Positions 44,921 to 62,956 of a stretch of DNA of 64,000 bases are shown here, one piece after another (the stretch's first letter is position 1; each line of letters opens with the position of its first letter). This DNA is from Schizochytrium sp. TIO01 (Eukaryota; Protista; Bigyra: Labyrinthulomycetes): positions 6,244,761 to 6,308,760 of the forward strand of contig SMSO01000031.1 in the NCBI GenBank assembly GCA_004764695.1. The letters are read 5' to 3'. Made by a program: the position numbers and the translations under genes. The notes below the pieces were generated by a model, which was not told the DNA's origin, did no database searches, and saw nothing but the letters and a program-made list of their open reading frames with translations.

Positions 44921-46732
44921 TCAATGTTCGCAGAGCTCTACAGCACGGATGTTCCAGTCCTGCTTATGCATCTTGCGCTCCTTCATGAGTTCTAGGCGGT
45001 GAGCCTTAGCCTCATCTAGACTTAACACAGATGACTGATCGGGCACCTCTTGGGTTGACACAATACGATGCTCAGGGTCCACGATAAAGAAGACAGCAAT
45101 GCGGCGACGTGCAGGCTTGTCAGAAGTGTTGGTCATCTTGCGGACTTTGTGGACGTGACTATTTGGGAACACAATTGTGCGTCCTTCAGGTGTGGCTACC
45201 ATACCCAGGGGAGCCAGGGCGTCCTCCATGATCTTGTCAAATGCAGGGTTCCGACACTGGGCAACGCCATAAAGCAAACGACCACGTTCCTCTGTCGTGA
45301 ATCCGCGCCGGTACATGAGCTCGCCGCCAACAATCCCTTCGCCGCGCTCAATCACATTCACGCAAGTACCAACAATACGCTCGTGCGACATTCCCTCAAC
45401 ATGCCAGACACCTTCATAAGATTCCCCAGGCTGAAGTTCGTAGTCCACAATCTTTGTGATCACTTGTAAAGATTTACCAGCGAGATTAATTTTCTCCAAT
45501 GGTCTGCCTTCATCGACCTCCCAATCCGTCTCTTCAGGTTCGTCGTCTTCGTCGTCTTCGCCCCCAGAGTTGGCTACTCGAACCCACTTTCCATAAGCAA
45601 TAATTGCCTCAATACGCGGGACCATGACACGGAATAGACGCGAAATAGTGTCGTACAGCTCGGGGTAGTCCGAGGCAGGGCGAAGGCCGTTAATGTCGTT
45701 TCGGATGCTCACACTTTTGTCTTTGGAAATGTCAAAATATGTTGGCATCCATTGATACTTGGATGCTTCAAAAGGCCGTCCCCATCGATCAGTCACAATC
45801 TTACCATCCCCATCCTTAAACTTTGGCGGGCTCTCAAGATCTGAAGATGGCGTGAAAGGGGATACATCACGAATGTACGAGTACAGTGCAGGGTGAACAT
45901 GATCAAGGACAACATCCTTGCTGTGAGGATGATAGTCTTTGGTACGCTTGCTTGCGAGTTCATCAACCTGCCTGTTAAGAGTCTTTACAAGCTCATCTGG
46001 GATAAGTTTATCAGCCCATGAAACACCTTCGCGAATATCCTGCGTCTGATACTTGGCCCAAATATCACCAAGAGGGAAGTTTGCCCTGCCCTTATAATTC
46101 CAGGATCCAACATCATTCAGATCAGCCTCGGCTAAAACACCAACCTTGAGAACTCCTTGTGTGACCTCCGAGTGAACAATTGCTTCGTCAAGTTTCCACA
46201 AAAGCTTCATCTTGGCTTCACACTCAAGAGGCTTGAGACCAGGAAGAGCAACAATATCTTTAGATTTTGCGCTCTTCATCTGATCCTTTGAGACCCCTGC
46301 AGCGAGACACTGCTCTTCAGTAAGAGGAATGAGCACAATGACACGTCCAGCACTGTCATCCACGCCAGTCTTAATAGCCTTTCCGGCATTCTCGAATGGC
46401 TGCCAAGGCGTCGAGGATGGCACAAACACCATCTCAGCGCCAGTACCAGGGAAGGTTTCAAGTTCCCAATATTCATCGCTATCCTCATCATCCGAAGGGT
46501 AATCTTGTTCGCTATGCACCATGATATCCTCGACGAAGCCTGGCTCATTAGTGTCAACAGTAATCGTCTCAGAACGAGCTGTGGCTTCTTGAGCAGCTTT
46601 TGAGACAGGCGCAAGACGCGCTTTGGCCTCAGACTCACGTAAGTACCCTGCAACAACCGGCAGTGCTACATCCACCGCAGCAGAGGAGCTCGAGGCCCCA
46701 GACTTTTTCTGAGAAGAAGAGCTATCCTCCAT
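44921..46732 (-). CDS. DUF4246-family protein (2OG-Fe(II) dioxygenase-like fold), copy 1, catalytic motifs intact; N-terminal F-box-like motif
   Basis: DYHPHSKDVVLDHVHPALY, SKYQWMP, INGL, LQVITKIVDYEL, WHVEGMSHERIV, FPNSHVHKV, RRIAVFFIVDP...IVST, LELMKER and C-terminal LCEH. The ORF is open from 47077; ATG 46732 or 46759 is likely. Confidence 0.85.
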   Translation of the reverse strand: MEDSSSSQKKSGASSSSAAVDVALPVVAGYLRESEAKARLAPVSKAAQEATARSETITVDTNEPGFVEDIMVHSEQDYPSDDEDSDEYWELETFPGTGAEMVFVPSSTPWQPFENAGKAIKTGVDDSAGRVIVLIPLTEEQCLAAGVSKDQMKSAKSKDIVALPGLKPLECEAKMKLLWKLDEAIVHSEVTQGVLKVGVLAEADLNDVGSWNYKGRANFPLGDIWAKYQTQDIREGVSWADKLIPDELVKTLNRQVDELASKRTKDYHPHSKDVVLDHVHPALYSYIRDVSPFTPSSDLESPPKFKDGDGKIVTDRWGRPFEASKYQWMPTYFDISKDKSVSIRNDINGLRPASDYPELYDTISRLFRVMVPRIEAIIAYGKWVRVANSGGEDDEDDEPEETDWEVDEGRPLEKINLAGKSLQVITKIVDYELQPGESYEGVWHVEGMSHERIVGTCVNVIERGEGIVGGELMYRRGFTTEERGRLLYGVAQCRNPAFDKIMEDALAPLGMVATPEGRTIVFPNSHVHKVRKMTNTSDKPARRRIAVFFIVDPEHRIVSTQEVPDQSSVLSLDEAKAHRLELMKERKMHKQDWNIRAVELCEH

Positions 46733-47997
46733 TTTCCGGCCCTTGCTTGCTTTTTCCATACCCTGGTGAAATGCTCGAACGGTGTTCTTGAATTCCAGTT
46801 CTGCATGCTTTGCGCGCGTGAAGATTGCCGACCCTGATGCTCTGCGCAAGCGAAGAGGACCATAACGTGTCCTATATTCTAGTACCAAAGTGTGCTTCAC
46901 AAAGTTGCAGAATGAGGCAGTTTCAGATACGCTATTACTAATACTCGTGACCGCTTTAGAAAACGAAAGCATTTTACGTGGATCAACAGCTACTGCTCTC
47001 GCAGGGATTAATATGTGTGGTGGACAAGAATGTAGTGCAGACAAAGAGGTCAAAGTAGCGGTTTTGCAGACTGGCATGCAACGTCACTCGCTCGTGCTGG
47101 AAACTTTGCAGTGAGTGATTCCATTTTAGTCAAAGCTTACAATTAATGGCAGTGTCAGATGTGCCATTTTACTAAATGGATTCGCATCATCTTTTGACGA
47201 CAGGCAGCTTGGTAGAGTCCATGTGAGCATTCATAGTGCGCGAATGCTCTGAAGCGTGGGCAATATCATCATGAACCGATGCTGGATAATTTGCGAAGGT
47301 TTGCTTGCATTCCCACAAACCAGAGATAATAGTGTGTAACCTTTTTACCTCGGTATGACAAATCTGCTGCACCTCCCTTGGTGAGACCACTGCCATGATT
47401 TCAATTCTAGACGTTTCACCAGTGTACTAGTAGGATATGCAAGAGATCACCTTACAAGTGCAATAGTAAAAGCTGGATTGAAGGTGCTGTACCTAGTACT
47501 AACTTGAGGTCGCCTTGCGCAGACTCCAAAGTAGGTTTCTTTGATGCATTTATGATTATGGGCTTGATCCTAGTCGGGCTGAGGGCTGTTGCAATGTGTA
47601 ATTGATCGAGATCTTCCCAGAACCACACAAATGGTCCGCCACCGTTTAGTTGATTCCTGCGATGCTACTACTACCTACCAATTTCTGTGCGGTCTAAGCA
47701 TTTGACTAAAAAACTTTCATGGCGGATATTATGGTATTACGATAATGGTATGGCATAATCCACAGAAATTGTGTGACCACCATACCTGGTATTAAATTAG
47801 AAGGCACCTACGCTGTGTTAATTCAAGGATTCATTATAACATTCACTTTTTAAATAGTGAGGAATTAAGTAAGTGAACTCGTAGGAAGCCAAAGGTCTTC
47901 ATCATATAGGAAAAAAGTCACAGTGTATAGAACTTTTTCATAAACTGACTTTGAAAGGGAAACTATCATGGTACTACAATTAAATTCGAGGCAAGCT

Positions 47998-49866
47998 CTA
48001 AACAAAGCTATATATGCTCGCGTTAAGAGCCCAATCTTGATGATACATGCGACGCTCTTTGAAGCATTCTTGGCAATGCCTGTGAGTCTCTTCTTGTGAA
48101 AACATGCTAGCTTGATCAGGAACCTCCTGGGTTGATACAATTCGGTGTTCTGGATCGACAACAAAAAACGCCAGCATTCGTGATCTACAATGCCGATCAA
48201 GGGGGTTCCGCACGGTCGAAAGGTTGACGATATGGCTTGATGGATATATTATTACTCGGCCTGCAGCAGTGTTTGAGCAACCTAGTGGAAGAAGCTCGTT
48301 TCTTCTTGAATTGCGGAACGCTTCATCATAGTTTTGAAACTCTTGTTCTAGATAGTCACGTTCACACGGCAGGTAGTTCCTGCGCACCAAACTTTCTCCT
48401 CCTTCGAGCTCTTCATCGAGGTCGATACAAAGAACGCAAGTGGCAATGATATGTTCATGAAAGACCCCCCCGACGTGCCATATATTTCCATCAGCATATC
48501 CTGGGGGCATGTCATGTTCTAAGATCTTGACAACAACCTGAAGCGAAGTTCCAGCAAGATTAACTCGCTCCAGCAAGTTGGGATCTAGAGCGCGCTTGCT
48601 GAAGGGCTTTGGGTTTTGAAAACGTTTCTTGTATAATTTTTCGTACGATAAAACTGACTCCAAGCGCGGAATCATTCTCGTGAAAATCCGACCAAGAACT
48701 TCATAGATTTGTGGGTGAGCTGAGGCTGGCCTGAGATCATTGATATCGTTTCGAATTGTCACGAATTTGTGGCAATCAATGTCAAAATAGGTCGGGAGCC
48801 ACTGGTAGGTAGGCATAAGTATCGGGTTTCCATTTCGATCCTCAATGTTGGAATAGTCTGGCGGCTGTGATAGATCAGAAGATGGTACGAATGGGGATAT
48901 GCCGCGAATGTAAAGATTCATGGCAGGATTGATCAGACCACGCATTCGCCCATCGTGGCCAATAACCTTGAGATCCGGGTAATGACCAGGAGGGCGGGAC
49001 TTGTCTAAATCATCGAGCAAATTATTCAAGGTCTTTCGAAGTTCATCAGACACCAAATCGTCAGCCCAGCAGACCCCCTCCCTGATGGGCCCCATCTGAT
49101 ATTTTGCCCAAATTTCACCTAAGTCAAAGTGCCCTTTAGCTTTAAATTTCCATGAATTTACGTTCATCAAATCTGCTGGGCTTGTGACAGCCACAAAGAT
49201 ACAGTCATTCTGGAAGGGTAAGACTATATGCACGCTTCCGAGGTCCCAAGTAAGTTTCTCGAATCTACCATGCGCCTGAGCTTTCAAGTGTGGCATTGCA
49301 ACGGTCTGACGCCAGCGGGCAGCCTTCATGATCGATTTTTCCAGACCTGCGTCTTGACATTGTGCAGAATCCATCTTCACTAACACAACGACACGTGCAA
49401 ACTGCTCCGAAATGCCTATTTTTAGCACCTTCCCAGCATTTGCAAATGGTTTCCAGGGTTTACGATCCGGGAAGTTGCTTAGAATGCTTGAAATATCAAA
49501 ACTCCCAATACCTCTTTGTTGTTCGTAAAGCCGCTTGAATATTACAATGTCATCGTCATCGTCTATGCTATTTGCATTATTATTGTCTTCTTCGTCACAA
49601 TCGGCCTCCAATTTATCCTTCAGAGTCTTGGCGACCTTGCCCTTTTGGGTAAATTCGAGCAGAAATTCGCTGGACCCTACATCCACATTGACAAGCTGCG
49701 CTCTGGCTTCTGCTCTTCGCATGCTTTTAGAGACCGGAGCCAACAAAGCTTTGGCTTCGCCCTGTGTAAAGAAGGTCGCTACTAGTGACATAACCTCCAC
49801 CACAGCCTCCGCGGACCTCGCCGAAGGTGCCTCCGACCGCCTGCGTTTTGTGCTAGGCTCATCCAT
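47998..49866 (-). CDS. DUF4246-family paralog copy 2 (metal triad degenerate: WHVGG / SHIVNL)
   Basis: Colinear with copy 1 (YQWLPTYFDI, INDLRP, LQVVVKI, FFVVDPEHRIVSTQEVPDQ). Starts MDEPSTKRRR. Confidence 0.85.
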   Translation of the reverse strand: MDEPSTKRRRSEAPSARSAEAVVEVMSLVATFFTQGEAKALLAPVSKSMRRAEARAQLVNVDVGSSEFLLEFTQKGKVAKTLKDKLEADCDEEDNNNANSIDDDDDIVIFKRLYEQQRGIGSFDISSILSNFPDRKPWKPFANAGKVLKIGISEQFARVVVLVKMDSAQCQDAGLEKSIMKAARWRQTVAMPHLKAQAHGRFEKLTWDLGSVHIVLPFQNDCIFVAVTSPADLMNVNSWKFKAKGHFDLGEIWAKYQMGPIREGVCWADDLVSDELRKTLNNLLDDLDKSRPPGHYPDLKVIGHDGRMRGLINPAMNLYIRGISPFVPSSDLSQPPDYSNIEDRNGNPILMPTYQWLPTYFDIDCHKFVTIRNDINDLRPASAHPQIYEVLGRIFTRMIPRLESVLSYEKLYKKRFQNPKPFSKRALDPNLLERVNLAGTSLQVVVKILEHDMPPGYADGNIWHVGGVFHEHIIATCVLCIDLDEELEGGESLVRRNYLPCERDYLEQEFQNYDEAFRNSRRNELLPLGCSNTAAGRVIIYPSSHIVNLSTVRNPLDRHCRSRMLAFFVVDPEHRIVSTQEVPDQASMFSQEETHRHCQECFKERRMYHQDWALNASIYSFV

Positions 49867-51120
49867 CGCTGCTGGGCAGTAACAGCCGGCACTGGCAACC
49901 TCAGCAGGGACTATATTCAAGACTCCCGCGATCAGCTATGGTGACCGAGCAACAAGTCAAGCAGTCTGCAGGCCTTAGAACAGCAAAGCTTGCTGAGTTA
50001 TGAAGTGCAACATAACAATCAATTGCCCCATTTTTTTGTTCTGTCAACTTTTGTCAATTTTTGTCCGTCCAAAGAGTTCTTTTCGTCATTTGTTTTCATT
50101 TAATTACTAGTAAAAAAAAGAAAAGAAAAAAAGAAAGGAATGTGCTTTGTGTCCAAATGTATAAATGGGCGACCACGAAATTCTTCAGATAGGCTTCAGC
50201 TTATTCTGGTGTATGTTTGTGATGTTGCTGATGCTTTGCGCTTAGCTTTTGTGTCTTGATATTGTACTTTTCTATTCTTGTTGCTGATGATGATTACATT
50301 CTTCTTTCCGTCCATTCTTGATATGTCTGTGATTGTTCCTGTGAAAGAATACTACAAAAAACACTTCGCTGGTTATTTTTGTTTTACAGATTAAAAAACA
50401 AACTTTATCCTTGTTGAGTCGAAGGCGTTGACCGCAAATCTCTATCTGAAGGCTGCTTCGTGCACAGAACCTTTGCGCTGGCGGTGAGGGGGCGCAAGAA
50501 CCTGGTAGGGCCTCGTCGGACACAGGTTTATGTTTAAAGAAGTCTCCTCACGACAAACTTTGCATATGTATATTCAGATCTTCGGGCGAGGGAGAATCTG
50601 AGGCACGTTCTCTAGAATACGGGAGCGTCTGTAGCGCGAGCTTTGCACTTGAGGACTGGAAATCGGAGCTGCTAGAGCTGGTGTTCCAGGTGTGAGGATA
50701 CTGCGTGGAACCTAAGAAGCCTATAGATCGGTTGGATCTAAGACTGCGAGATCTTGGCGTGCACTTAGGCTTGTGCAGAACTTTTGGGGAGCAAATCTGC
50801 ATAGATACCGGCCTTGGAATTCAAGAAGAGCGTTCCTTGCCCAGCAGACGAGAGGAATTGCTTCGTCTGGCTTTTAGAATCGTGTTGAGGTGTCGAACTG
50901 GCATGAAAGTCGTTGTGACCAGTCACTAGATGAGCTTGCAAGTTTCCAACAACTGAATAAATAGAACCTGTAAAGTGCCAAGATAGAGGTACTAGAACAA
51001 TTGTTCTTCTGGAGATAAAATATTTGTGATCTTTTCGTCAGCAAACCTTGAAAAATACTGTTGCGGGCTTCAAGTAATTATTTTGCTGACGAAATCACTT
51101 TATCGTATCAAAGACACCCA

Positions 51121-52935
51121 ATGAAAAATTCACAGCGTCCAGCTAAACGGGCCCGGCGAACACACGATGCAGCCATTTCACGCGAGATGGCAATAGACAT
51201 TATTATGCCAAGTGTTGCAAGTTTTTTCACTCAAGCTGAAGTGCGATCGTTATTGGTCCCGGTTTCCAAGTCCGTGCAAAGAGCAGCGGCGCGAGCCCCA
51301 GTTATTACTGTCAATACTGGGTCGCAGCGGTTTCTCTATGAAATCACCAAATCCGAACTGACCTCAAGGGTACGCCACCGCACGAATGATCGTACAAGCC
51401 TAGATGTTGACGAGGATGATGATAGTGACGAAGAAGGGTTTAACATCGCAAGAATTCTTGCTCCGTTTCCGAACAATGTGACATGGTCACCTTTTGAAAA
51501 TGCTGGCCCAGTTCTAAAAATGGGTGTCTACGATCAATACTCGCGTCTTGTTGTTCTGGTAGCACTCACTGAAGAGCAAATTCTTCGTGCAGGGCTAGGA
51601 CTCGAAGAAGCCCAGACTGCCAAACGTAGAGAAAATGTAAACCTGTCACGACTTAGCCCCAGGGCAGATGGAGAAAAATTTGAGGAGCTCACTTGGGATC
51701 TTGACAAAGTCACCGTTATTGCGCCATTTGAAAATGGCGTGCTCAAGGTCGCAGTAATGAGTCCTGCCGACTTGAACGGGGTAGGATCATGGACCTTCAA
51801 ATCGCGAGGACTTTTTGAGCTTGGTGACGTTTGGGCAAAGCATCAGCTGCAGAATGTCTCAGAAGGCGTCTCATGGACGGATTGCACAGCAACGCAAGAG
51901 CTTTTTGCTGAAATAAATGAAGCTGTTGAAAATTATGGACGTGAGCACTCTCCTCTTGTCCCTCCAGGAGCAAACAAGGTTGTTCATATCTATGTGACAC
52001 CCACTTTACTTCCTTTTATTAGAGGTGTTTCTAAATTTGTTCCTTCTGCTGACTTAGCTGATCCTCCCGTATTCGGAGGTCGTACGAGTCAGCTTGACGA
52101 TGATGACATGAGCATTCCACTCGAGATGCCAAAGTACCAATGGCTTCCTGCATACTTTGATCTCGATGCCAATAAGAATGCTACCATTCGTACGGATATC
52201 TCTGGTTTACGCCCGGCTTCTGCCTTTCCTGAATTGTATGATTGTTTCGCGCGCCTATTCAGTCTCGCAGTACCAAGAATTGAAGGGGTTTTGGCTTACA
52301 ATCGGTGGTTTCGAAGACGGTTACAGGCAAGGAAAGAAACGAACATTATGCCTGAGCTAGAGCGAATTGACTTATCAGGGACATCATTACAAGTGATGAT
52401 AGTACTAGCAGATTACGTTCTCCAGCCAGGAGAGTCCTTCAATTCGAAATGGTTCTTGCGTGGGATGTTTCATGAGCATATTGAAGTCACATGTTTGTAT
52501 ATCCTAAGTCGGGACGAAGAGATTGAAGGGGCCGATATTCTCTTTCGACGATGGTTTTTTCAAGAGGAAAGAGATTACTTGAGAGAACAATTTTCCGATT
52601 GCGACCCCGCATTTCGCCAAACCTGGACTACAGCTTTTAAGCCTCTTGGTTCGATAGCTACTCCAGCACATCGTAGTATTGTAGTTCCAGCAACGCATTT
52701 GATTAATCTTCATGAAATGAAAAACACATCAAATAAAACTGCTCGCTGTCGCACACTTGTGTTTTTTGTCGTCGATCCAGAAAAACGCATCGTCTCAACT
52801 CAAGAGGTTCCCGACCAGAAGGACTTATTCACATCAGATGAAGTCCTTCACCATGCCACCGAAATGATGAGGGAGCGGCATAGATCGCAACAAGATTTGG
52901 CAGTCTATTTAGATTACATTAGCGGAATAATTTGA
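51121..52935 (+). CDS. DUF4246-family paralog copy 3 (metal triad absent: WFLRG / THLINL)
   Basis: Colinear with copy 1 (KYQWLPAYFD, ISGLRP, SLQVM, FFVVDPEKRIVSTQEVPDQ). Starts MKNSQRPAKRARR. Confidence 0.85.
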   Translation: MKNSQRPAKRARRTHDAAISREMAIDIIMPSVASFFTQAEVRSLLVPVSKSVQRAAARAPVITVNTGSQRFLYEITKSELTSRVRHRTNDRTSLDVDEDDDSDEEGFNIARILAPFPNNVTWSPFENAGPVLKMGVYDQYSRLVVLVALTEEQILRAGLGLEEAQTAKRRENVNLSRLSPRADGEKFEELTWDLDKVTVIAPFENGVLKVAVMSPADLNGVGSWTFKSRGLFELGDVWAKHQLQNVSEGVSWTDCTATQELFAEINEAVENYGREHSPLVPPGANKVVHIYVTPTLLPFIRGVSKFVPSADLADPPVFGGRTSQLDDDDMSIPLEMPKYQWLPAYFDLDANKNATIRTDISGLRPASAFPELYDCFARLFSLAVPRIEGVLAYNRWFRRRLQARKETNIMPELERIDLSGTSLQVMIVLADYVLQPGESFNSKWFLRGMFHEHIEVTCLYILSRDEEIEGADILFRRWFFQEERDYLREQFSDCDPAFRQTWTTAFKPLGSIATPAHRSIVVPATHLINLHEMKNTSNKTARCRTLVFFVVDPEKRIVSTQEVPDQKDLFTSDEVLHHATEMMRERHRSQQDLAVYLDYISGII

Positions 52936-53910: not shown

Positions 53911-55770
53911 ATGAACCATGCTTCCAAGCGCGCGAGGTCGGAGTCAAGTCTAACTAAGCCAGACGAAGCATCTGCGGTCATGGAGTTCGTCCTGCCCTTG
54001 GTGGCCACTTTTTTCACACAAAGCGAAGCCAGGGCTCTCCTCGCACCACTATCCAAAGGCGCCAGAAGAGCTGTTGCAAGAGCACAGATTGTAACCATGG
54101 AGACCCATACACGTGGCTTTCTTGAGGATGTTCTCTCAATGATTACACCTAAGAGCGTTCCAACTGATGAGAAGACCAACAACACAGAAATCAATACTAA
54201 TGATGATGAGGATATTTTGGGCCTTGAGTCCGATGAGGATAACAGTCGCGGCTTTGATATCTCCAGCATCCTTCACCGCATGCCTGCGGGTCATATCTGG
54301 AGACCATTCTCAAATGCAGGGCAAGTTTTACGAATGGGTATTTCCGAGCAGTATGATCGAGTTGTGATCCTTCTTGCGATGTCACAGAACGAATGCGCAG
54401 CAGCAGGACTTGACGTAGAGAAGCTGCACTCACTCAAGCGCAGAGATATTGTGGCGTTACCGGGCCTTCAGAGTCAATCTCACGGTGATATAGAGGAACT
54501 AGAGTGGGAGCTGAATTCGGTCCATGTCGTGAAGCGATGCCAAGATGGCAGCTTGTTGGTTGCCCTATTAAGTCCTGCAGATTTGGGGAATGTGGGATCT
54601 TGGAAAATCAAAGCAAGAGGGCATTTTGCTCTTGGCAAGCTGTGGGCGAAACATCAAACAAAGAACATCATTGAAGGTGTTACATACGGCGATGATCTGA
54701 TGCCACAGGATCTTCTTGCAGATGTAAACCAAGAAATCGACAATTTAAAGACTGGCAATATGCTTGTTGGAATCGACTACTATGGAGACCACATGTCTGT
54801 TTATGTCGCACCAGACCATCCTCCCTTTGTTCGTGGGGTAACGCCATTCGTTCCATCAAAAGATCTCGCGAGTGTTCCTGAGCTGCTTGATGAAGATGGA
54901 AATCCAATAGAAGATCGAAATGGAATGCCCATCGTCATGCCGACGTACCAATGGCTCCCCGCGTACTTTGACATTGATGAACATAAGAATGTGTCAATTC
55001 GTACCGATATCAATGGACTACGGCCTGGATCAAATTACCCCAAGCTTTATGATGGCATCGCACGGTTGTTTAAGATTGCCATTCCTCGTCTTGAGGCTGT
55101 GATGGCTTACTCAAATCAATTTCGGAATTGCTTAAGAAGTGCAGAAAATCGAGGTATTGGTGGTGCTTCACGTGGTCCTGTAAATTTTCAACTGGGGTGT
55201 ATCAACCTCGCAGGACAGTCTCTTCAAGTTATGACGAAAATTGTGGACTATGTCCTCGAGCCAGGTGAATCGTATGGAACTGAGTGGCACGTCGGTTGTA
55301 TGTGTCATGAGCGAGCTATAGCTGCATGCTTCTTTATTTTAGATCGTGACGAAGGTATTGATGGCGGCGATGTTCTTTTCCGACGTTGGTTCCTGGAAAC
55401 TGAGCGACAAATGCTCATGCAACATTTCAAAGATAGTGACTCGCAGCTCCGAGACATGTGGAAGTGCGCCTTTTGCCCTCTAGGCAAAGTTGCAACTCCA
55501 GATGGCCGGGTTTTCGTTCTTCCAATGAGTCACCCGCTTAATGTACAGCCCATGATAAACACGACGAATCGCACGTTGCGTTGTCGTACTATGGCACTAT
55601 TTGTAGTTGATCCTGCACACCGTATTGTATCAACCCAAGAGGTCCCTGATCAATCATTGACTATGAGCGAAGAGGAGTGTCAAGAGCACGCAAGGAAACT
55701 TTATAATGAACGTCGTATGTATCAGCGAGACTTGGCTGTCTATCAAGATTACCTAAGTGGATTTATTTGA
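53911..55770 (+). CDS. DUF4246-family paralog copy 4 (WHVGC / SHPLNV)
   Basis: Intact 619-aa ORF colinear with the other copies. Starts MNHASKRAR. Confidence 0.87.
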   Translation: MNHASKRARSESSLTKPDEASAVMEFVLPLVATFFTQSEARALLAPLSKGARRAVARAQIVTMETHTRGFLEDVLSMITPKSVPTDEKTNNTEINTNDDEDILGLESDEDNSRGFDISSILHRMPAGHIWRPFSNAGQVLRMGISEQYDRVVILLAMSQNECAAAGLDVEKLHSLKRRDIVALPGLQSQSHGDIEELEWELNSVHVVKRCQDGSLLVALLSPADLGNVGSWKIKARGHFALGKLWAKHQTKNIIEGVTYGDDLMPQDLLADVNQEIDNLKTGNMLVGIDYYGDHMSVYVAPDHPPFVRGVTPFVPSKDLASVPELLDEDGNPIEDRNGMPIVMPTYQWLPAYFDIDEHKNVSIRTDINGLRPGSNYPKLYDGIARLFKIAIPRLEAVMAYSNQFRNCLRSAENRGIGGASRGPVNFQLGCINLAGQSLQVMTKIVDYVLEPGESYGTEWHVGCMCHERAIAACFFILDRDEGIDGGDVLFRRWFLETERQMLMQHFKDSDSQLRDMWKCAFCPLGKVATPDGRVFVLPMSHPLNVQPMINTTNRTLRCRTMALFVVDPAHRIVSTQEVPDQSLTMSEEECQEHARKLYNERRMYQRDLAVYQDYLSGFI

Positions 55771-57292
55771 GTGAGAATGTGGATGATCTTCAATTTGATT
55801 AGCTTTGAATCTGTTACCGTTTTCTAATGGAAGAGATGAATGAGGGCGGTTTTCAGTAGTTTGCTAATTTGTTCATCCGTTTTAATCAAAGGCGAATGAA
55901 TATAACGAGGAGACCGCGACACATGAAACACCTTCTCTTCTAAGTTTCCAGTCCCATGCATGTTTAAGGAGATGAAGATACTTTTGTACCAAAGCCCTTA
56001 TTTCAAGCGATTTGACAAGCATTAGCAGGTGGCATAATGTAACCAAACACATTACGCTTACTGTGACCTTGCACAAGGATGATTTGAAGCAAGGAGACCA
56101 AAACGCAGCTAGAATCGAGCGTCCGCTTCTTGATGTTTTTTCTAGAACATCGATTCCAAAGTCTTACACTGGTTCCTCGAGAAATCTTTCTGTGCATCCT
56201 TCACCTATTGTTACTCTCGTAAATTCTCTCCAGAATTGCCGATCTTGATCGGCGAAACCATTTGATTCTTTCATTATTAATTTTACACCAGCACCTTTAA
56301 TATTTATCATCTACGCACCTATAGAGTATTTTATGAAAAAAACAAAAACAAAACCAAAACACTTCTATTTATTTTTAAAAATGAATTAAAAAAATTACAT
56401 GTTGATTTTTGTTTCTGTCATTGTATATGTGATAAACTAAATTAGTCCCCTGCATTCTGATATAATAAATCAATAACTTTGTGCAGAGGTTCATGGCACA
56501 CATGATTCCCCCAAAAACGAAGCTTCCTCGGCGTCTGTGGTCGCTTAGGGATCGTGTGGAAACTTTCGTCATGATCTTGTAATTAAAGTCCGTGTTCGTT
56601 TTATTATTATTATTTTATTTTTTTATTTTTATTTTTTTGTTTAAAAGTAATACATAAACAAATAATTGTCATTACTGATATTATTGTGATGATTAAAAAT
56701 TTAATTACCACTGGCAGTCATTCTTTTTCTATTATAACTGTTCAATGACTGATTTATTGTGACTAAAAAAGAGTGTTGTTACAATGCGTCACCCATCAGA
56801 TACTGGATACCTTGAAGACTACAGACTACGTAGTATATAGATTGGACATGAGTTGGGAGCGCGAGTCCTTTTAAAACTTCCAGCAGAACGAGGAAGACTT
56901 CGCGGATCAAATGCGGAACCTTGGAACCAAGGGGTTAAAAAATCTCGGGAGCCTGATCCGCTTAGCGAGCTTGAGGTTTCAAGGAAAGTTACTCGCGACG
57001 TCCATTCATGAAAGAGTTTAAGATGTCGTTTGGATATGGCCATCAGTGGTGAAAGGGACTCAGCAAGATAGCAATCTTCAGTTGAACATGGGGTTCTGTA
57101 TGGAACTCATAGCTATAGACAGCATTGCTATTAATCCTGTGCACCTTTAGTGAATTAAGGTTTTTGAGTCATCTTTTCGCATACTACCCAAGACCATTTT
57201 CAACAACGTGAGACCTTGTCTGCCGAGTCGCGAGTCGCCTGTTGATGCATACGCGGGTCAGGTGTACTGGAGATCTCAAAGCAGCTGCAGCC

Positions 57293-59152
57293 ATGAACCA
57301 TGCTTCCAAGCGCGCGAGGTCGGAGTCAAGTCTAACTAAGCCAGACGAAGCATCTGCGGTCATGGAGTTCGTCCTGCCCCTGGTGGCCACCTTTTTCACA
57401 CAAAGCGAAGCCAGGGCTCTCCTCGCACCACTATCCAAAGGCGCCAGAAGAGCTGTTGCAAGAGCACAGATTGTAACCATGGAGACCCATACACGTGGCT
57501 TTCTTGAGGATGTTCTCTCAATGATTACACCTAAGAGCATTCCAACTGATGAGAAGACCAACAACACAGAAATCAATACTAATGATGATGAGGATATTTT
57601 GGGCCTTGAATCCGATGAGGATAACAGTCGCGGCTTTGATATCTCCAGCATCCTTCACCGCATGCCTGCGGGTCATATCTGGAGACCATTCTCAAATGCA
57701 GGGCAAGTTTTACGAATGGGTATTTCCGAGCAGTATGATCGAGTTGTGATCCTTCTTGCGATGTCACAGAACGAATGCGCAGCAGCAGGACTTGACGTAG
57801 AGAAGCTGGACTCACTCAAGCGCAGAGATATCGTGGCGTTACCGGGCCTTCAGAGTCAATCTCACGGTGATATAGAGGAACTAGAGTGGGAGCTGAATTC
57901 GGTCCATGTCGTGAAGCGATGCCAAGATGGCAGCTTGTTGGTTGCCCTATTAAGTCCTGCAGATTTGGGGAATGTGGGATCTTGGAAAATCAAAGCAAGA
58001 GGGCATTTTGCTCTTGGCAAGCTGTGGGCGAAACATCAAACAAAGAACATCATTGAAGGTGTTACATACGGCGATGATCTGATGCCACAGGATCTTCTTG
58101 CAGATGTAAACCAAGAAATCGACAACCTGAGGACCGGCAACAGACCTATTCGTATTGATCGCTATGGAGCCAATGTGTCTGTTTATATCGCACCGCACCT
58201 ACCTCCCTTTGTTCGTGGGGTAACGCCATTCGTTCCATCAAAAGATCTCGCGAGTGTTCCTGAGCTGCTTGATGAAGATGGAAATCCAATAGAAGATCGA
58301 AATGGAATGCCCATCGTCATGCCGACGTACCAATGGCTCCCCGCGTACTTTGACATTGATGAACATAAGAATGTGTCAATTCGTACTGACATTACTGGGC
58401 TGCGGCCTGCATCAAATTACCCCAAGCTTTATGATGGCATCGCACGGTTGTTTAAGATTGCCATTCCTCGTCTCGAAGCTGTGATGGCTTACTCAAATCA
58501 TTTCAGGAACTGCCTAGGGGCAGCAGAGAATCGAGGTATTGGTGGTGCTTCCATCAGTCCTGTAACCTCTCAACTAGACCGCATCAACCTCGCAGGACAG
58601 TCTCTTCAAGTTATGACGAAAATTGTGGACTACACGTTAGAGCCGGGTGAATTTTATGGAACGGAGTGGCACGTCGGTTGTATGTTCCATGAGCGAACAG
58701 TTGCTACATGCTTCTTTATTTTGGATCGTGACGAAGGTATTGATGGCGGCGATGTTCTTTTCCGACGTTGGTTCCTGGAAACTGAGCGACAAATGCTCAT
58801 GCAACATTTCAAAGATAGTGACTCGCAGCTCCGAGACATGTGGAAGTGCGCCTTTTGCCCTCTGGGCAAAGTTGCAACTTCAGATGGCCGAGTTTTCGTT
58901 CTTCCGACGAGTCACCCTCTCAATGTGCGGCCCATGGTAAACACGACGAATCGCACGTTGCGTTGTCGTACTATGGCACTATTTGTAGTTGATCCTGCAC
59001 ACCGTATCGTATCAACCCAAGAGGTCCCTGATGAATCATTGACTATGAGCGAAGAGGAATGTCAAGAGCACGCAAGGAAACTTCATAATGAACGTCGTAT
59101 GTATCAGCGAGACTTGGCTGTCTATCAAGATTACCTAAGTGGATTTATTTGA
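57293..59152 (+). CDS. DUF4246-family paralog copy 5, near-duplicate of copy 4
   Basis: Same length as copy 4 (1860 nt, offset 3382). Near-identical except in discrete patches. Confidence 0.87.
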   Translation: MNHASKRARSESSLTKPDEASAVMEFVLPLVATFFTQSEARALLAPLSKGARRAVARAQIVTMETHTRGFLEDVLSMITPKSIPTDEKTNNTEINTNDDEDILGLESDEDNSRGFDISSILHRMPAGHIWRPFSNAGQVLRMGISEQYDRVVILLAMSQNECAAAGLDVEKLDSLKRRDIVALPGLQSQSHGDIEELEWELNSVHVVKRCQDGSLLVALLSPADLGNVGSWKIKARGHFALGKLWAKHQTKNIIEGVTYGDDLMPQDLLADVNQEIDNLRTGNRPIRIDRYGANVSVYIAPHLPPFVRGVTPFVPSKDLASVPELLDEDGNPIEDRNGMPIVMPTYQWLPAYFDIDEHKNVSIRTDITGLRPASNYPKLYDGIARLFKIAIPRLEAVMAYSNHFRNCLGAAENRGIGGASISPVTSQLDRINLAGQSLQVMTKIVDYTLEPGEFYGTEWHVGCMFHERTVATCFFILDRDEGIDGGDVLFRRWFLETERQMLMQHFKDSDSQLRDMWKCAFCPLGKVATSDGRVFVLPTSHPLNVRPMVNTTNRTLRCRTMALFVVDPAHRIVSTQEVPDESLTMSEEECQEHARKLHNERRMYQRDLAVYQDYLSGFI

Positions 59153-60850
59153 GTGATCGTCAGTTTAATTGTCTTAAAGTCCGTCCAAGCCCTGCATAGA
59201 AAGAGATGAGCAGAGTCTTAGTAGTTTGCTGGTTTGTAAAAAATATTTCCGTTTTTTGTATCATTTTTAATTGCTTGTCTACCTTGTCTTTTGGGGCATC
59301 GTTTCTAGTTCATATTCTGAGCTTCAACGCAGTGTTCCCACGGTTGTCTCTGTCTTGGGCAGATGTTGTGACAAACTAAGGAATAAGGCAATCAATCTCC
59401 TTGCTTTAGAGAATTTGCTCGCAAGAGTGTTCCTGGAACGAAGCCTTCAAGTCCTGTCTTTTCGACGTGCCCAACGCCACTGCTTCGACCCCTAATTTCA
59501 CAATCCCGACTGAGCCCTCCGCAACCAGTGCAGGTTCCACCGCACCTGCCTTCTATCAATCCACATGAACCCAAGGAACCCAAAACGCTCCTGCTCTCGT
59601 TCCAGGGCACTCGCGATAACCCCTCAAATGCATGCTGACTTTCCATCTCCGTGCATGCACATCTCACTACTTCGAAGAATCGTTAAGCACCAAAGCCAAA
59701 GCCGGCTCCCGGGATCCTGCAAAACATTGGGGACCCTCCCACGAGCGGCATCATCCTGAAGGTATTCGTCCACCGCCTTGTACAGCGGCGTATCTTGGTT
59801 TCTTGTAACCAGAGAACGTGCCTTAAGTTCGTGGCCAAGGCGGTCAGGGATGCCACAGCTTTTCCACTGCTACCACCCGCGCAGGCCAAAACCAAAATAA
59901 AGTCAACCTCCCCGCTGCCCGTGCTGTCTCCGCTGCAAATCTGCTTTCATTCGAGGCGCCGTGCGTCGCAGAGGATTCCACGCTGCGCAAGTCCATTCCG
60001 AGCGGTTCTGGAGACCAATGTGCCAAGTTCTTTCCTTTTACAGGTGAGCGTGGCCAAACCATAATTGAGCGAGAACTCAGCTCTCTCAACACAGCCGTGC
60101 ATCCGTCCAAGTGCAGTCTCAGTCTCCGCTCAAACTGTCCTGCTCAGGGCTGCAGATTCAGGGTTTCTCAGCTGCTGTTGCCTCGCTTGCGAAACCATTT
60201 CACAGTCTAAGATCAAATCACATCAGATTTGATCAGTTCTTTCATTTGCATTGAAGAGTCGAAAACCGAACAGGTAATACGGAATTTGCAAAGCCAAGAC
60301 CGAGATAACTAACTGACTTTCAGGCAACCAAAAGCTGTGCGTAGCGCTATTGAGGCAAAGGAAGAGACCTTGAAAGCGTCGCGCATTGCTATCTCGATCG
60401 AATCAGCTTTGGCCACCAGATAGATGCACACGTGACATACGTGCTGTACAATCTCGGTTAAAATTATATCTCTGAGAGAAGTTTTGTTATTTGAGTGAGA
60501 ACAAAAAGTTCTCAACGAAAGCTGAAACCAAGGTCGGCGAATCATTGTGCACATCAATAATTTGACTCGGCAAGCGAATCGCGTGGGCACTGAGCGTTTG
60601 CCCAGCAGCGCCGCTGCTTGAATGTACTGCCCTTGACTGTTTGGCTATGCTTGAGCTCTTTCAACGAAGTTTTGTTTGACTTTGGACGCCAAAAAGACTA
60701 AAAAGAGAAGAACGAAGCATTTATTTATAAATTGAAAAAAAAAAAAAAAACAGGAAAGAAAAAAAAAAAAAAAAAAAAAAAAAGCGCAAGAGAATGGACA
60801 TCTTTCTGATGCTACTCTTCAGACCCAGAACTACTTCACGCGGGACCACC

Positions 60851-62956
60851 ATGGAGGATGCCCTCGTTGGTGATCGCCATGCTACGGGAATAGACACACG
60901 CAACCCTAAGCGTCCCCGATCCCAGGCGAGCTCGGCGTCAGGTACTGTGGAGAGGGCCATGAGCACTGTCATGCCGCTAGTCGCCAGCTTCTTCTCACAG
61001 GCGGAGGCGCGCGAGCTCTTATCTCCTGTATCAAGAGGCGTGCGTCGTGCAGTTTCGCGAGCGCAGGTTGTGACTCCTGACGTCGGAGCTTGGGACTTTT
61101 TGCACGAAATGGCCTCCCAGGGAGCCAGGAGCTGCGAGATCAAAAGAACCTATCATGAGGCTCGCAAGAACGCCAAACAGAACTTCAATAACAGTAGCAG
61201 CAGCAGCAGCAGCAGTAGCAGTAGCAGCAGCAGTAGCAGTAGCAGCAGCAGCAACCATGTTAGCACGCCAAAGGAAGTTCCTTTTTCCTCCAATTCAAGT
61301 TCAAGTGCTGCTGAAAGCCTTAATGACCAAAGCGGAACAAATGATCAAAAAGTTTTGGACCATGCTGCTGATCTGAAGCACAATAAGATGGAGAATAACG
61401 AAGACGATGAAGACGATGAAGACGACTACGATGACGACGATGACGGATTCAATATTGCAAGCATTCTCTCACCGTTTCCACCAAGCACTGTGTGGATGCC
61501 TTTCAAGAATGCTGGGAAGGTGAAAAAGATGGCAATATATGCACAGCTTGGGCGCTTGGTGGTGCTAGTAAACCTTACCAAAGATCAATGTCTGGAAGCT
61601 GGCCTTGATGAGAAAACCCTTCAAACTGTAAAACCTAGGGATGTGATTCATTTACCAAACCTTAAGTCGCAGCGGTACGAAGGTTTCGAGGAACTTGCGT
61701 GGGATCTTGATCAAGTTCGAGTGGTTAAATCTTTCCAAAATCACAAACTAGTGATCGCAGTTATGAGCCCGGCAGACCTGGGAGGTATAAACTCATGGAA
61801 GTTCAAGGCTCGTGGCCAATTTGAGCTGGGGAATATCTGGCACAAGCATCAAACAAAGAATGCCAGGGAGGGTGCCACATGGGCAGACGACATTGCACCT
61901 CCAGAAGTTTGCGATGCTTTGAATGATGCGCTTAACAAAAACGCTCCACCAAACCCTGTAAGAAAACATAAAGTCTTCCCAGACTTTTTGCGTGAGCATA
62001 TGTCCCACGGTGCATATCCATTCATCAGGGATGTCTCTCCATTTGTACCCTCAAAGGACCTCGCCCAACCTCCAGACTTCACTGACGCGGAAGGCAACAT
62101 TAAGGAAGACCGGTTCGGACGACCAATCGTATTGCCTAAGTATCAACTTCTTCCGACTTATTTTGATATTGATAAATCACGCGGGGTGACGATTCGAAAC
62201 GACATTGATGGTTTGCGCCCAGCCTCGCGCTTCCCAGAGCTTTATGATTCTATCGCACGTCTTTTTCGGGTAATGCTACCCCGAATTGAGGCAACTCTCT
62301 CGTATGTACGTTGGTTTCAGGCAGCAACTAAAAATGATTCTGATTTTGATCCTGCAACGGGCGCAAATATCCCCCTTGAACGAATTGATCTTACAGGGCG
62401 TTCTCTTCAAGTCATTACCAAGATAGTGGATTATGAGCTGCAACCTGGGCAGTTCTATGACACTCAGTGGAGCGTCAAGGCTATGTTTCACGAGAGAGTT
62501 GCTGTTCGTTGCTTCTTTGTACTGGACCGAGACGAAGCTTTGACAGGCGCAAATGTTCTTTTTCGCCGCTGGTACTTGCCCAAAGAAATGGACTTCTTAG
62601 CTCAACACTTTGGGTTTATGCAGGGTAAGGGCTCGTTGGGTTTGATCAACAGCAAATTTATCCCGTTGGGACGTGTATCGACTCCGGCTGGCCGGGCCAT
62701 TGTGTTCCCTGCTACGCACATGATGACCGTGGATCGTCTTAAAAATACCTCTGACAAGGTCGCCAGATGTCGAATGGTGGCGTTTTTCATTGTAGATCCA
62801 GACCATCGCATTGTATCTACGCAGGAGGTACCAGATCAAAGCTCGATGCTATCCGAGGAAGACACTATGGAACATCTTAATGCTCTTTTTAAAGAACGTA
62901 AGATGTACCAAGAGGACCCGGGGATCTTCTTGGACTACCTTAGTGGTGTTATTTAA
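60851..62956 (+). CDS. DUF4246-family paralog copy 6 (WSVKA / THMMTV) with poly-Ser and acidic expansion
   Basis: Colinear with the other copies. ATG 60851 sits in an ACCACCATGG context, though the ORF is open from 60794. Basic motif NPKRPR. Confidence 0.85.
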   Translation: MEDALVGDRHATGIDTRNPKRPRSQASSASGTVERAMSTVMPLVASFFSQAEARELLSPVSRGVRRAVSRAQVVTPDVGAWDFLHEMASQGARSCEIKRTYHEARKNAKQNFNNSSSSSSSSSSSSSSSSSSSSNHVSTPKEVPFSSNSSSSAAESLNDQSGTNDQKVLDHAADLKHNKMENNEDDEDDEDDYDDDDDGFNIASILSPFPPSTVWMPFKNAGKVKKMAIYAQLGRLVVLVNLTKDQCLEAGLDEKTLQTVKPRDVIHLPNLKSQRYEGFEELAWDLDQVRVVKSFQNHKLVIAVMSPADLGGINSWKFKARGQFELGNIWHKHQTKNAREGATWADDIAPPEVCDALNDALNKNAPPNPVRKHKVFPDFLREHMSHGAYPFIRDVSPFVPSKDLAQPPDFTDAEGNIKEDRFGRPIVLPKYQLLPTYFDIDKSRGVTIRNDIDGLRPASRFPELYDSIARLFRVMLPRIEATLSYVRWFQAATKNDSDFDPATGANIPLERIDLTGRSLQVITKIVDYELQPGQFYDTQWSVKAMFHERVAVRCFFVLDRDEALTGANVLFRRWYLPKEMDFLAQHFGFMQGKGSLGLINSKFIPLGRVSTPAGRAIVFPATHMMTVDRLKNTSDKVARCRMVAFFIVDPDHRIVSTQEVPDQSSMLSEEDTMEHLNALFKERKMYQEDPGIFLDYLSGVI
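61192..61253 (+). repeat. Coding (AGC/AGT)n trinucleotide repeat encoding about 20 Ser
   Basis: Directly visible within copy 6. Confidence 0.9.

What the first reader, a model, noticed from the sequence alone, without database searches (positions are those of the whole stretch)
44921..62956. Six-gene DUF4246 array: one intact 2OG-Fe(II)-type enzyme plus five preserved pseudoenzymes
Seen: six colinear, uninterrupted ORFs of ~600-700 aa. Copy 1 has W-H-V-E-G (45392-45406) and FPNSHV-H-KV (distal His at 45149-45151). In copies 2-6 these read WHVGG/SHIVNL, WFLRG/THLINL, WHVGC/SHPLNV (twice) and WSVKA/THMMTV. So the carboxylate and distal His are lost in all five, and the first His in two. The Arg on the final strand (RRIAVFF, SRMLAFF, CRTLVFF, CRTMALF, CRMVAFF) and the scaffold motifs (YQWxP, VDPxxRIVSTQEVPD) are kept. 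Copy 1's terminal LCEH is replaced by DYLSGxI-like tails. Established: H-x-D/E...H is the Fe(II) facial triad of double-stranded beta-helix 2OG oxygenases. From recollection, DUF4246 proteins conserve WHVEG, DxHP..VLDLVHP and a terminal LCEH. Inference: a lineage-specific expansion converted an enzyme fold into non-catalytic binding proteins that remain under selection.
Basis: partly seen in the sequence, partly recalled or inferred. Interest (0 to 1): 0.88.

Follow-up and report, generated by a model that had tools for sequence, protein, structure and literature searches.

The report
One live oxygenase, seven dead copies
A marine protist genome carries one normal-looking DUF4246 iron/2-oxoglutarate oxygenase gene followed by a row of expressed, selectively maintained copies that have lost every residue needed for that chemistry. 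They are therefore pseudoenzymes of unknown, probably binding or adaptor, function.

Summary
All six ORFs are DUF4246 (PF14033) genes. They lie in two orientations (c1, c2 minus; c3-c6 plus). A seventh copy lies about 1.2 kb past the window end and an eighth is unlinked.

- **Copy 1:** it keeps 41 of 41 positions that are at least 95% conserved in 235 outside family members. Its model is a PHD2/P4H-like double-stranded beta-helix (Z 12-14.6).
- **The other seven:** they keep 18-24 of the 41 positions. All have lost the Glu of HxE, the distal His, the DYHP/VHP histidines (c7 keeps the VHP one) and the C-terminal CEH.
the array copies have also lost the family-invariant Arg, which is now Cys or Ser. 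This Arg aligns with the 2OG-binding Arg/Lys of prolyl hydroxylases.
- **Not decaying:** transcript-like contigs or MMETSP transcripts exist for c1-c5, c7 and c8. c4/c5 dN/dS is 0.24. Neutral drift would have introduced about 13 stops.
- **Origin:** the eight form one clade (support 100). No full-length relative was found among 1.84 billion representatives.

Function is inferred, not shown. An N-terminal F-box-like motif has only weak support. The result is a new variant of a known kind (dead 2OG-oxygenase paralogues), of moderate interest.

The parts
44921..46759 (-). c1: the canonical, presumably active DUF4246 2OG/Fe(II) oxygenase. It is 612 aa from Met107 of the ORF; the ORF itself runs on to 47077.
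   Evidence: PF14033 at 176 bits. Keeps 41/41 family-conserved positions. AF2 model is a DSBH. RNA-like contigs end at 46730-46790, and polymorphism and indels pile up in 46850-47046.
45392..45406 (-). c1 W558-H559-V-E561-G: the HxE metal ligands.
   Evidence: H and E are 97% conserved in 235 outside members. They fall on PF13640 profile positions 15 and 17, where genuine P4Hs of this genome have HxD.
45149..45163 (-). c1 N639-S-H641-V-H643. H643 is the likely distal ligand. H641 is kept in all eight paralogues.
   Evidence: Both His are invariant in the family. hhalign pairs H643 with the P4H distal His (probability 25%).
45101..45109 (-). c1 R657-R658-R659. R658 is the likely 2OG C5-carboxylate binder.
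   Evidence: R658 is 96% conserved. It falls on PF13640 profile position 90, the Arg/Lys of genuine P4Hs, and hhalign gives the same pairing.
44924..44935 (-). c1 C-terminal L-C-E-H.
   Evidence: C, E and H are 100% conserved at the very C-terminus of outside members. The tail is lost together with the catalytic core in other lineages.
47998..49866 (-). c2: dead paralogue (WHVGG; core states H-G-V-S), 622 aa.
   Evidence: MMETSP transcript P0087 is 99% identical and starts at this Met. RNA-like contigs cover only the gene body.
51121..52935 (+). c3: dead paralogue (WFLRG; core F-R-I-C), 604 aa.
   Evidence: MMETSP transcript P0250 (604 aa) is in the same 90% cluster.
53911..55770 (+). c4: dead paralogue (WHVGC; core H-G-L-C), 619 aa.
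   Evidence: c4-like and c5-like JGI/MMETSP proteins exist. dN/dS against c5 is 0.24.
57293..59152 (+). c5: near-twin of c4. The two are 94.9% identical over the CDS only, in a mosaic pattern.
   Evidence: blastn; the flanks are unrelated; dS is 0.024 in codons 1-250 and 0.26 in codons 251-550.
60851..62956 (+). c6: dead paralogue (WSVKA; core S-K-M-C). The ORF opens at 60794. It carries a poly-Ser/acidic insert.
   Evidence: No transcript evidence was obtained for this copy.
53980..54078 (+). F-box-like three-helix motif of c4. The equivalent motif is present in all eight paralogues, c1 included.
   Evidence: Alignment A6. AF2 helices at residues 19-56. 10 of the top 50 structural neighbours are Skp1-bound F-boxes, but at Z 3-4 only. 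The Pfam and hhalign tests were not met.
55579..55587 (+). c4 R-C-R: the family-invariant Arg is replaced by Cys.
   Evidence: The derived state is shared by c3-c7; c2 has Ser.

Best explanation
The locus is a lineage-specific tandem family in a thraustochytrid. I infer Aurantiochytrium limacinum or a near relative.

**c1.** It is a canonical DUF4246 protein, a PHD2/prolyl-hydroxylase-like 2OG/Fe(II) oxygenase with the complete family signature. It is presumably active and probably nuclear.

**c2-c7 in the array, plus an unlinked c8.** They descend from a c1-like ancestor. They kept the N-terminal module and the beta-helix scaffold. They lost the Fe(II) carboxylate and the distal His in all seven. 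Three also lost the first His. The array copies lost the 2OG-binding Arg. All lost the co-conserved DYHP/VHP (c7 keeps the second His) and the C-terminal CEH. They therefore cannot carry out 2OG-dependent oxidation.

**Maintenance.** They are transcribed and under purifying selection, so they are functional pseudoenzymes.

**Most likely mode of action (inferred).** They bind non-catalytically through the former substrate cleft. The pocket segments have diverged between copies. They may act as adaptors or competitors in the pathway served by c1, possibly through the shared F-box-like N-terminus.

**Shown versus inferred.** Shown: fold, residue losses, monophyly, transcription, constraint. Inferred: lack of activity, nuclear location, binding or adaptor role.
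For: - **Family and fold:** PF14033 hits for all copies. The c1 model has pLDDT 88 and pTM 0.90. It matches 2OG oxygenases at Z 12-14.6. PF13640 is reached by homologues.
- **Ligand register:**
- **Residue losses:** c1 keeps 41/41 positions and c2-c8 keep 18-24/41. The four core residues (H559, E561, H643, R658) read HEHR in 210 of 249 sampled sequences (14 of them this genome's own). The dead copies read HGVS, FRIC, HGLC, SKMC, HGMC and QAYR. Of 95 columns that are at least 80% conserved in the family, 44 are kept, 45 are freed and 6 are replaced by a new shared residue. The freed columns cluster in active-site segments.
- **Co-loss elsewhere:** in other taxa the core, DYHP/VHP and the CEH tail are lost together (9 of 10 cases, Fisher p = 7e-11).
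- **Origin:** the eight paralogues form one clade (support 100). c1 branches first with a short branch (0.33). The dead copies have branches of 0.7-1.4. Full-length matches in 1.84 billion representatives are this genome's own genes only.
- **Selection:** for c4/c5, pN is 0.031, pS 0.122 and omega 0.24 (Fisher p = 6e-12). Omega is 0.23 in the unconverted tract. Simulated neutral drift gives about 13 stops, and 0 of 2000 simulations stay open. Between strains there are 4 replacements in 622 aa (c2) and 2 in 635 aa (c7).
- **Transcription:** MMETSP transcripts exist for c2, c3, c4/c5, c7 and c8. In two runs, gene-body-only contigs of differing depth cover c1 and c2, against uniform coverage in a DNA run.
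Against: - No biochemistry exists: lack of activity is inferred from residues.
- No model coordinates were available, so the pocket could not be inspected. H641, H565/E566 and the new Cys658 might form some other site in c4, c5 and c7.
- The distal-His assignment rests on a low-probability hhalign match (25%). H641 is retained everywhere.
- The runs used for transcription are only guessed to be RNA. c6 has no transcript evidence.
- dS is saturated for all pairs except c4/c5, which are also affected by gene conversion.
- Nothing identifies a ligand or partner. The F-box reading fails the Pfam and hhalign tests.
Confidence: 0.75

Rival explanations
1. Prozyme-type regulators. The dead copies form heteromers with the single active c1 and tune its activity, stability or targeting, as dead paralogues do for trypanosomatid AdoMetDC. 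This is a special case of the pseudoenzyme reading.
For: One active gene sits next to its dead paralogues and shares the same N-terminal module. Contig depths of c1 and c2 differ between runs, so stoichiometry could be regulated (depth is a poor measure).
Against: PHD/P4H-like domains are often monomeric (my own knowledge). No evidence of contact was obtained. Seven diverged regulators for one enzyme is more than the model needs.
Confidence: 0.12
2. The altered pocket still binds a metal or performs another reaction. Either H559/H641/Cys658 form a new site in c4, c5 and c7, or the HxG...H arrangement works as in 2OG-dependent halogenases.
For: H641 is invariant in all eight copies. H565/E566 are kept in seven. 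Cys658 is a shared derived residue in c3-c7. c2, c4, c5 and c7 read H-x-G.
Against: No candidate ligand set is common to all copies: c3 and c6 lack H559 and c2 lacks Cys658. Halogenases keep the distal His and the 2OG-binding Arg, and both are gone here. 45 of 95 family-conserved columns, concentrated in active-site segments, are now variable.
Confidence: 0.08
3. Decaying pseudogenes that merely happen to be open.
For: Branches are three to four times longer than that of c1, and about half of the family-conserved positions are lost.
Against: The frames stay open over 600+ codons, where neutral drift predicts about 13 stops. Omega is 0.24. Transcripts exist. 44 scaffold positions are still conserved.
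Confidence: 0.02

Closest known systems
HIF prolyl hydroxylase PHD2/EGLN1 and prolyl 4-hydroxylases (PF13640, 2OG-FeII_Oxy_3)
   Same: Same double-stranded beta-helix (Z about 12, roughly 180 residues aligned). c1 has HxE, a distal His and the Arg in the same registers.
   Different: Sequence identity is only 12-17%. DUF4246 adds DYHP/VHP motifs, an insert between strands VII and VIII, and an invariant C-terminal CEH. No substrate is known. c2-c8 lack the ligands.
BelL / HrmJ (bacterial 2OG-dependent enzymes; best structural matches)
   Same: Highest Z (14-14.6, rmsd 2.9-4.0).
   Different: They are small-molecule biosynthetic enzymes of Streptomyces at 12-14% identity. There is no evidence of shared chemistry.
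JARID2 and fission-yeast Epe1 (JmjC proteins acting without demethylase activity)
   Same: A 2OG-oxygenase fold is used for non-enzymatic nuclear roles. The non-enzymatic function of Epe1 is described in PMC7192584. JARID2's lack of Fe-binding residues is from my own knowledge.
   Different: They belong to a different branch of the superfamily (JmjC, not PHD-like). They are single genes, not a tandem family beside the active parent. Epe1 keeps its metal ligands.
KDM2A/KDM2B (FBXL11/FBXL10): F-box plus 2OG oxygenase in one protein
   Same: They possibly share the combination of an F-box-type motif with a 2OG-oxygenase domain (my own knowledge for KDM2; for the motif here). The Fbl10 F-box is among the structural neighbours (6bva_E, Z 3.1).
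   Different: The F-box here is unproven and N-terminal. There is no CXXC, PHD or LRR domain. The oxygenase domain is PHD-like and, in seven copies, dead.
Trypanosomatid prozymes (dead paralogues that activate AdoMetDC or deoxyhypusine synthase)
   Same: A dead paralogue is retained next to an active enzyme (my own knowledge).
   Different: No heteromer has been shown here. The enzyme class differs and there are seven dead copies.

Membership tests
DUF4246 (Pfam PF14033) | Match to the family HMM above the gathering score (26.7 bits) | tested here: met
   c1 scores 176 bits and c2-c6 score 97-111 bits. c7 and c8 are also over the cut-off.
DUF4246 (Pfam PF14033) | Family signature residues (DYHP, VHP, WHVEG, NSHxH, the invariant Arg, terminal CEH) | tested here: not met
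   Met by c1 only (41/41). c2-c8 keep 18-24 of the 41 positions that are at least 95% conserved outside this genome.
2OG/Fe(II) oxygenases (double-stranded beta-helix, PHD/P4H-like) | DSBH fold | tested here: met
   c1 model: Foldseek E = 1e-7 and VIA Z 12-14.6 to solved 2OG oxygenases. c2-c8 are about 40% identical to c1 over the domain. No dead copy's domain was modelled.
2OG/Fe(II) oxygenases (double-stranded beta-helix, PHD/P4H-like) | HxD/E...H facial triad | tested here: not met
   c1 has H559, E561 and H643. In c2-c8 E561 is G, R, G, G, K, G, A and H643 is V, I, L, L, M, M, Y. H559 is lost in c3, c6 and c8.
2OG/Fe(II) oxygenases (double-stranded beta-helix, PHD/P4H-like) | Basic residue on strand VIII that binds the 2OG C5 carboxylate | tested here: not met
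   R658 sits at PF13640 position 90. It is kept in c1 and c8 and is Ser or Cys in c2-c7.
2OG/Fe(II) oxygenases (double-stranded beta-helix, PHD/P4H-like) | 2OG-dependent turnover | not testable with these tools
   Needs recombinant protein assays.
F-box proteins (SCF substrate receptors) | Match to the F-box or F-box-like HMMs (PF00646, PF12937) | tested here: not met
   No hit at E up to 10 on the N-termini. The array was not among the 12 genome-wide PF12937 matches. hhalign against this genome's F-boxes gives probability 2%. Diatom homologues are sub-threshold only, at E 0.011-0.09.
F-box proteins (SCF substrate receptors) | Three-helix F-box fold | tested here: inconclusive
   The model has helices at residues 19-56 with pLDDT about 70. 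10 of the top 50 of 48,161 chains are Skp1-bound F-boxes aligned to residues 17-62, but at Z 3.0-4.0, below the tool's trust level.
F-box proteins (SCF substrate receptors) | Binding to Skp1 | not tested
2OG-dependent halogenases (HxG/A...H) | Carboxylate replaced by Gly/Ala, with both His and the 2OG-binding Arg retained | tested here: not met
   c2, c4, c5 and c7 read HxG but lack H643 and R658.
Pseudoenzymes | Homologue of an enzyme that lacks catalytic residues yet is expressed and constrained | tested here: met
   residue losses; transcripts; omega 0.24; open frames. Absence of activity itself is untested.

The most novel reading that the evidence does not exclude
The dead copies are a family of F-box-type SCF substrate receptors. 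They would use a disarmed oxygenase pocket, diversified between copies, to recognise the unmodified or hydroxylated targets of the one live enzyme c1. That would make an enzyme-plus-readers module built from a single fold, in a nuclear, possibly DNA-damage or ADP-ribose-linked, pathway.
Probability: 0.1. Interest if true: 0.8.

Novelty: new variant of a known kind. Interest (0 to 1): 0.52.

Why it matters
DUF4246 is a widespread eukaryotic family. The profile of the dead copies alone found 1,923 representatives. No paper in the searchable library mentions the family.

- **What the family is.** This locus shows it is a PHD/P4H-like 2OG oxygenase with extra invariant elements (DYHP/VHP and the C-terminal CEH). 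These elements are lost together with the catalytic core wherever the core is lost.
- **A natural contrast.** One intact enzyme sits beside seven expressed, constrained, catalytically disarmed paralogues in a thraustochytrid that can be grown in the laboratory.
- **Two questions become testable.** What does the family do, and what do dead oxygenase folds do once freed from catalysis?

If the F-box-like N-terminus is real, the family would link oxygenase-type recognition to ubiquitin ligases. Otherwise the finding is a clean but not unprecedented example of pseudoenzyme birth by tandem duplication.

Tried and rejected
- **Sequence search of solved structures** with the family profile: no hit even at E = 10. 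The fold was therefore assigned from a model.
- **Papers:** none mention DUF4246, PF14033 or IPR025340 in this sense. The supplements of an A. limacinum proteome paper (PMC12221091) do not mention it either.
- **Word-indexed homologue search** with the dead-copy alignment returned only this organism's own proteins, because of candidate capping. The exhaustive search replaced it.
- **N-terminal region:** no Pfam family, no ESM Atlas look-alike, no Foldseek match. The beta domain gives only Z of 4.7 or less, to PilZ and split-barrel folds.
- **F-box:** hhalign against this genome's own F-boxes gives probability 2%, so it is not claimed.
- **Complex prediction** of the c1 domain with the c4 domain returned no answer (score 0.00). 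This is no evidence for or against binding.
- **dN/dS for deep pairs:** dS is saturated, so NG86 and YN00 fail.
- **Model coordinates** are not exposed by the tools, so metal-site geometry, the placement of DYHP/VHP/CEH and the choice between H641 and H643 could not be settled structurally.
- **Halogenase reading:** rejected on the missing distal His and Arg.
- **Decay reading:** rejected on open frames, omega and transcripts.


Full report
**What is there.** The region holds six long ORFs. They are c1 44921-47077 (-), c2 47998-49920 (-), c3 51061-52935 (+), c4 53857-55770 (+), c5 57242-59152 (+) and c6 60794-62956 (+). They lie in two orientations, diverging between c2 and c3, so they are not colinear. 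All six match Pfam DUF4246: c1 at 176 bits in one stretch, c2-c6 at 97-111 bits in two stretches. They are 39-41% identical to c1. A six-frame scan of the whole 64-Mb, 37-contig assembly found two more members. c7 begins about 1.2 kb past the window end (L008 166-2073, 635 aa, WHVGG). c8 is on another contig (L002 673-2784, 703 aa, WQVAG). The neighbours are ordinary eukaryotic genes: a class II ribonucleotide reductase, Serinc, an aminotransferase, DnaJ, CD36 and RGS.

**Organism.** MMETSP0959-0961 transcripts are 99% identical to c2 and c7. MMETSP transcripts also share 90%-identity clusters with c3, c4/c5 and c8. I recall these MMETSP samples as Aurantiochytrium limacinum ATCC MYA-1381. A roughly 62-Mb telomere-to-telomere assembly of that strain is described in bioRxiv 10.1101/2023.06.15.545109. 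The taxon id in the MMETSP header, 87120, resolves to a fungus, while A. limacinum is 87102. I take this to be a digit slip. The organism call is therefore an inference.

**Gene models.**
- The MMETSP transcripts start c2 at Met19 of its ORF (622 aa) and c3 at Met21 (604 aa).
- For c1, RNA-like contigs end at 46730-46790. One strain has 12 differences within 46850-47046, against 10 in the 1.84-kb CDS. A DNA run has three 1-nt deletions at 46941-46948.
- c1 therefore most likely starts at Met107 (46759) and is 612 aa long. That start aligns with the paralogues' N-termini.

**The family signature and the fold.**
- In 45 diverse homologues the invariant residues are DYHP, VHP, W-H-V-E-G-M-S-H-E, P-N-S-H-x-H, the middle Arg of K/R-R-R, and a terminal L-C-E-H.
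- No solved structure is detectable by sequence.
- An AF2 model of c1 residues 330-718 is confident (pLDDT 88, pTM 0.90).
- It matches 2OG/Fe(II) oxygenases only. Foldseek top hits are HrmJ, PHD2 and BelL at E about 1e-7. VIA-align gives Z 14.6 for BelL, 13-14 for HrmJ and about 12 for PHD2, with roughly 180 aligned residues.
- Several homologues also reach PF13640 (2OG-FeII_Oxy_3). One passes its cut-off.

**Which residues are the ligands.** I compared the PF13640 match registers of DUF4246 proteins with those of nine or ten genuine P4H-like genes of this same genome.
- H559 and E561 fall on profile positions 15 and 17, which is the HxD of the P4Hs.
- R658, the middle Arg, falls on position 90, which is the 2OG-binding Arg/Lys six residues before the conserved Trp.
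- hhalign of the family against the P4H alignment gives the same Arg pairing. It pairs H643 with the distal His. Its probability is only 25%, so this last assignment is the weakest link.
- H641, two residues earlier on the same strand, is also invariant and could not be excluded without coordinates.

**State of the eight copies.** 41 positions are at least 95% conserved in 235 family members from other organisms. c1 keeps all 41. c2-c8 keep 18-24. The four core residues read H-E-H-R in 210 of 249 sampled sequences (14 of which are this genome's own). The states here are as follows.

| Copy | H559 | E561 | H643 | R658 |
|---|---|---|---|---|
| c1 | H | E | H | R |
| c2 | H | G | V | S |
| c3 | F | R | I | C |
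| c4, c5 | H | G | L | C |
| c6 | S | K | M | C |
| c7 | H | G | M | C |
| c8 | Q | A | Y | R |

The invariant 2OG-binding Arg is gone in every array copy.
- DYHP/VHP, WGR and the CEH tail are gone as well, except that c7 keeps the VHP histidine.
- Of 95 columns that are at least 80% conserved in the family, the dead copies keep 44 (scaffold). They replace 6 with a new shared residue, including R658 to Cys. They let 45 vary, and these cluster in 381-398, 432-437, 556-571, 637-643 and 690-698.
- Outside this genome, 190 of 207 complete members have the core, DYHP/VHP and the CEH tail together. 9 of the 10 with a damaged core lack both other features (Fisher p = 7e-11, not corrected for relatedness).
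- The extra motifs therefore belong to the catalytic apparatus. Dead DUF4246 lineages have arisen elsewhere too, in about 5% of members.

**Origin.** A maximum-likelihood tree of 82 domains puts the eight paralogues in one clade (SH-aLRT 100).
- c1 branches first on a short branch (0.33).
- c8 comes next.
- c2-c7 form a clade (support 97) with long branches of 0.7-1.4.

An exhaustive profile search of 1.84 billion representatives with the dead-copy alignment gave full-length matches only to this organism's own genes (843-1085 bits). The next hit scores 385 bits and covers the DUF4246 domain only. The expansion and the dead clade therefore appear lineage-specific. The most parsimonious history is loss of E561, H643 and the tail before the c8 split, then loss of R658 in the array ancestor.

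**Are they alive?**
- *Constraint.* c4 and c5 differ at 96 sites, with pN 0.031, pS 0.122 and omega 0.24-0.30 (Fisher p = 6e-12). Their similarity stops at the CDS borders and is mosaic. dS is 0.024 in codons 1-250 and 0.26 in codons 251-550, where omega is still 0.23. This looks like gene conversion over an older duplicate. It is not positive selection on the pocket.
- *Deep pairs.* All deeper pairs have saturated dS with dN 0.5-0.7. A neutral simulation at 0.25 substitutions per site gives about 13 stops, and no open frame in 2000 trials. Between strains there are 4 replacements in c2 and 2 in c7. In the partial variant list, silent changes outnumber replacements.
- *Transcription.* MMETSP transcripts are listed above. 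In two runs the contigs cover only the gene bodies of c1 and c2, at different depths, with nothing in the 1-kb spacer. A genome run covers everything evenly at 19x in one contig. The runs are only guessed to be RNA. c6 has no evidence either way.

**The N-terminal module.** All eight copies, c1 included, share three elements:
- a K-R-x-R motif, which looks like a nuclear localisation signal (my inference);
- a conserved stretch of the form hydrophobic-P-x-V-A-x-F-F-x-Q-x-E-A-R-x-L-L-x-P-V-S-K, which aligns with an ILSYV...LR.VSKxW motif of diatom homologues;
- an acidic linker followed by a small beta domain.

The F-box tests gave mixed results.
- Pfam sees no F-box here.
- hhalign against this genome's F-boxes is insignificant, although in the expected register.
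- Three of ten diatom homologues give sub-threshold F-box-like hits at that motif (E 0.011-0.09).
- The AF2 model (pLDDT 68) has three helices at residues 19-56. In an all-against-48,161-chains comparison, 10 of the top 50 neighbours are Skp1-bound F-boxes aligned to exactly that part, including Skp2, FBXL17, FBXL5, FBXL2, Fbl10, FBH1 and AnkB. They score only Z 3-4.

I treat the F-box as a lead, not a finding. Other first-stage notes of the scan raise the same lead, the c4/c5 mosaic and the variable DxHP segment. I reached these independently and tested them as stated above.

**Context for function.** In other taxa DUF4246 is fused to WGR, zf-PARP, PBZ, WWE or DEK_C modules. This points to a nuclear, DNA-damage or ADP-ribose-linked role for the active enzymes. 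That is inference from domain association only.

**Verdict.** The locus holds one canonical enzyme plus seven expressed, constrained paralogues with the cofactor and metal apparatus removed. What they bind and whether they act with c1 is unknown.

Noticed in passing
window 39799-42168 (+): A 789-aa ORF with RNR_Alpha, the B12-dependent RNR insertion domain and the RNR barrel. This is a class II (B12-dependent) ribonucleotide reductase in a eukaryote. Another first-stage note (s1-821959) flags the same gene.
   Followed up: partly
window 49249-49426: One low-depth contig (depth 4, against about 15 for the unjoined form) in run X6 skips 176 nt with GT..AG on the plus strand. That is antisense to c2 and the length is not a multiple of 3. 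It may be an antisense spliced transcript or an assembly artefact.
   Followed up: no
window 46850-47046: Strain differences and three 1-nt deletions (46941, 46944, 46948 in DNA run X19) are concentrated in the in-frame upstream extension of the c1 ORF. This argues that the first 106 codons are not coding.
   Followed up: partly
window about 61180-61450: c6 carries a long poly-Ser run followed by an acidic Asp/Glu run that is absent from the other copies. It is a low-complexity insert, possibly microsatellite-driven.
   Followed up: no
L002 673-2784 (other contig, C24): The unlinked dead copy c8 keeps the RRR triplet and N639. It reads WQVAG and SHEY, and it ends in a His/Cys-rich extension (HHCPICDCN) not seen in any other copy.
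   Followed up: no
homologues P0045, P0053, P0077, P0091, P0093, P0094, P0103, P0104, P0107, P0118: Canonical DUF4246 domains are fused to WGR, zf-PARP, PBZ (zf-CCHH), WWE or DEK_C modules in other organisms. This hints that the family works in poly-ADP-ribose or DNA-damage signalling.
   Followed up: no
family-wide (P0133, P0137-P0139, P0160, P0168, P0179, P0186, P0199): Other organisms also have DUF4246 members with a damaged core, and those have lost DYHP/VHP and the CEH tail too. Two of them (P0133, P0186) carry the same Arg-to-Cys change at the 2OG-binding position.
   Followed up: partly
window 30001-32000: A GC spike (0.574 against about 0.45) lies over the 5' end of an aminotransferase gene (28945-30471, -) and an overlapping 273-aa ORF without a Pfam match.
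   Followed up: no
window 42385-44393 (-): Two overlapping ORFs (321 and 381 aa) directly upstream of the array have no Pfam family. They may be one gene with an intron or frame change.
   Followed up: no
MMETSP headers of P0122, P0126, P0251: The headers give TAXON_ID=87120, which NCBI taxonomy resolves to the fungus Rhizopogon burlinghamii. Aurantiochytrium limacinum is 87102, so this is probably a transposed digit in the source metadata.
   Followed up: partly
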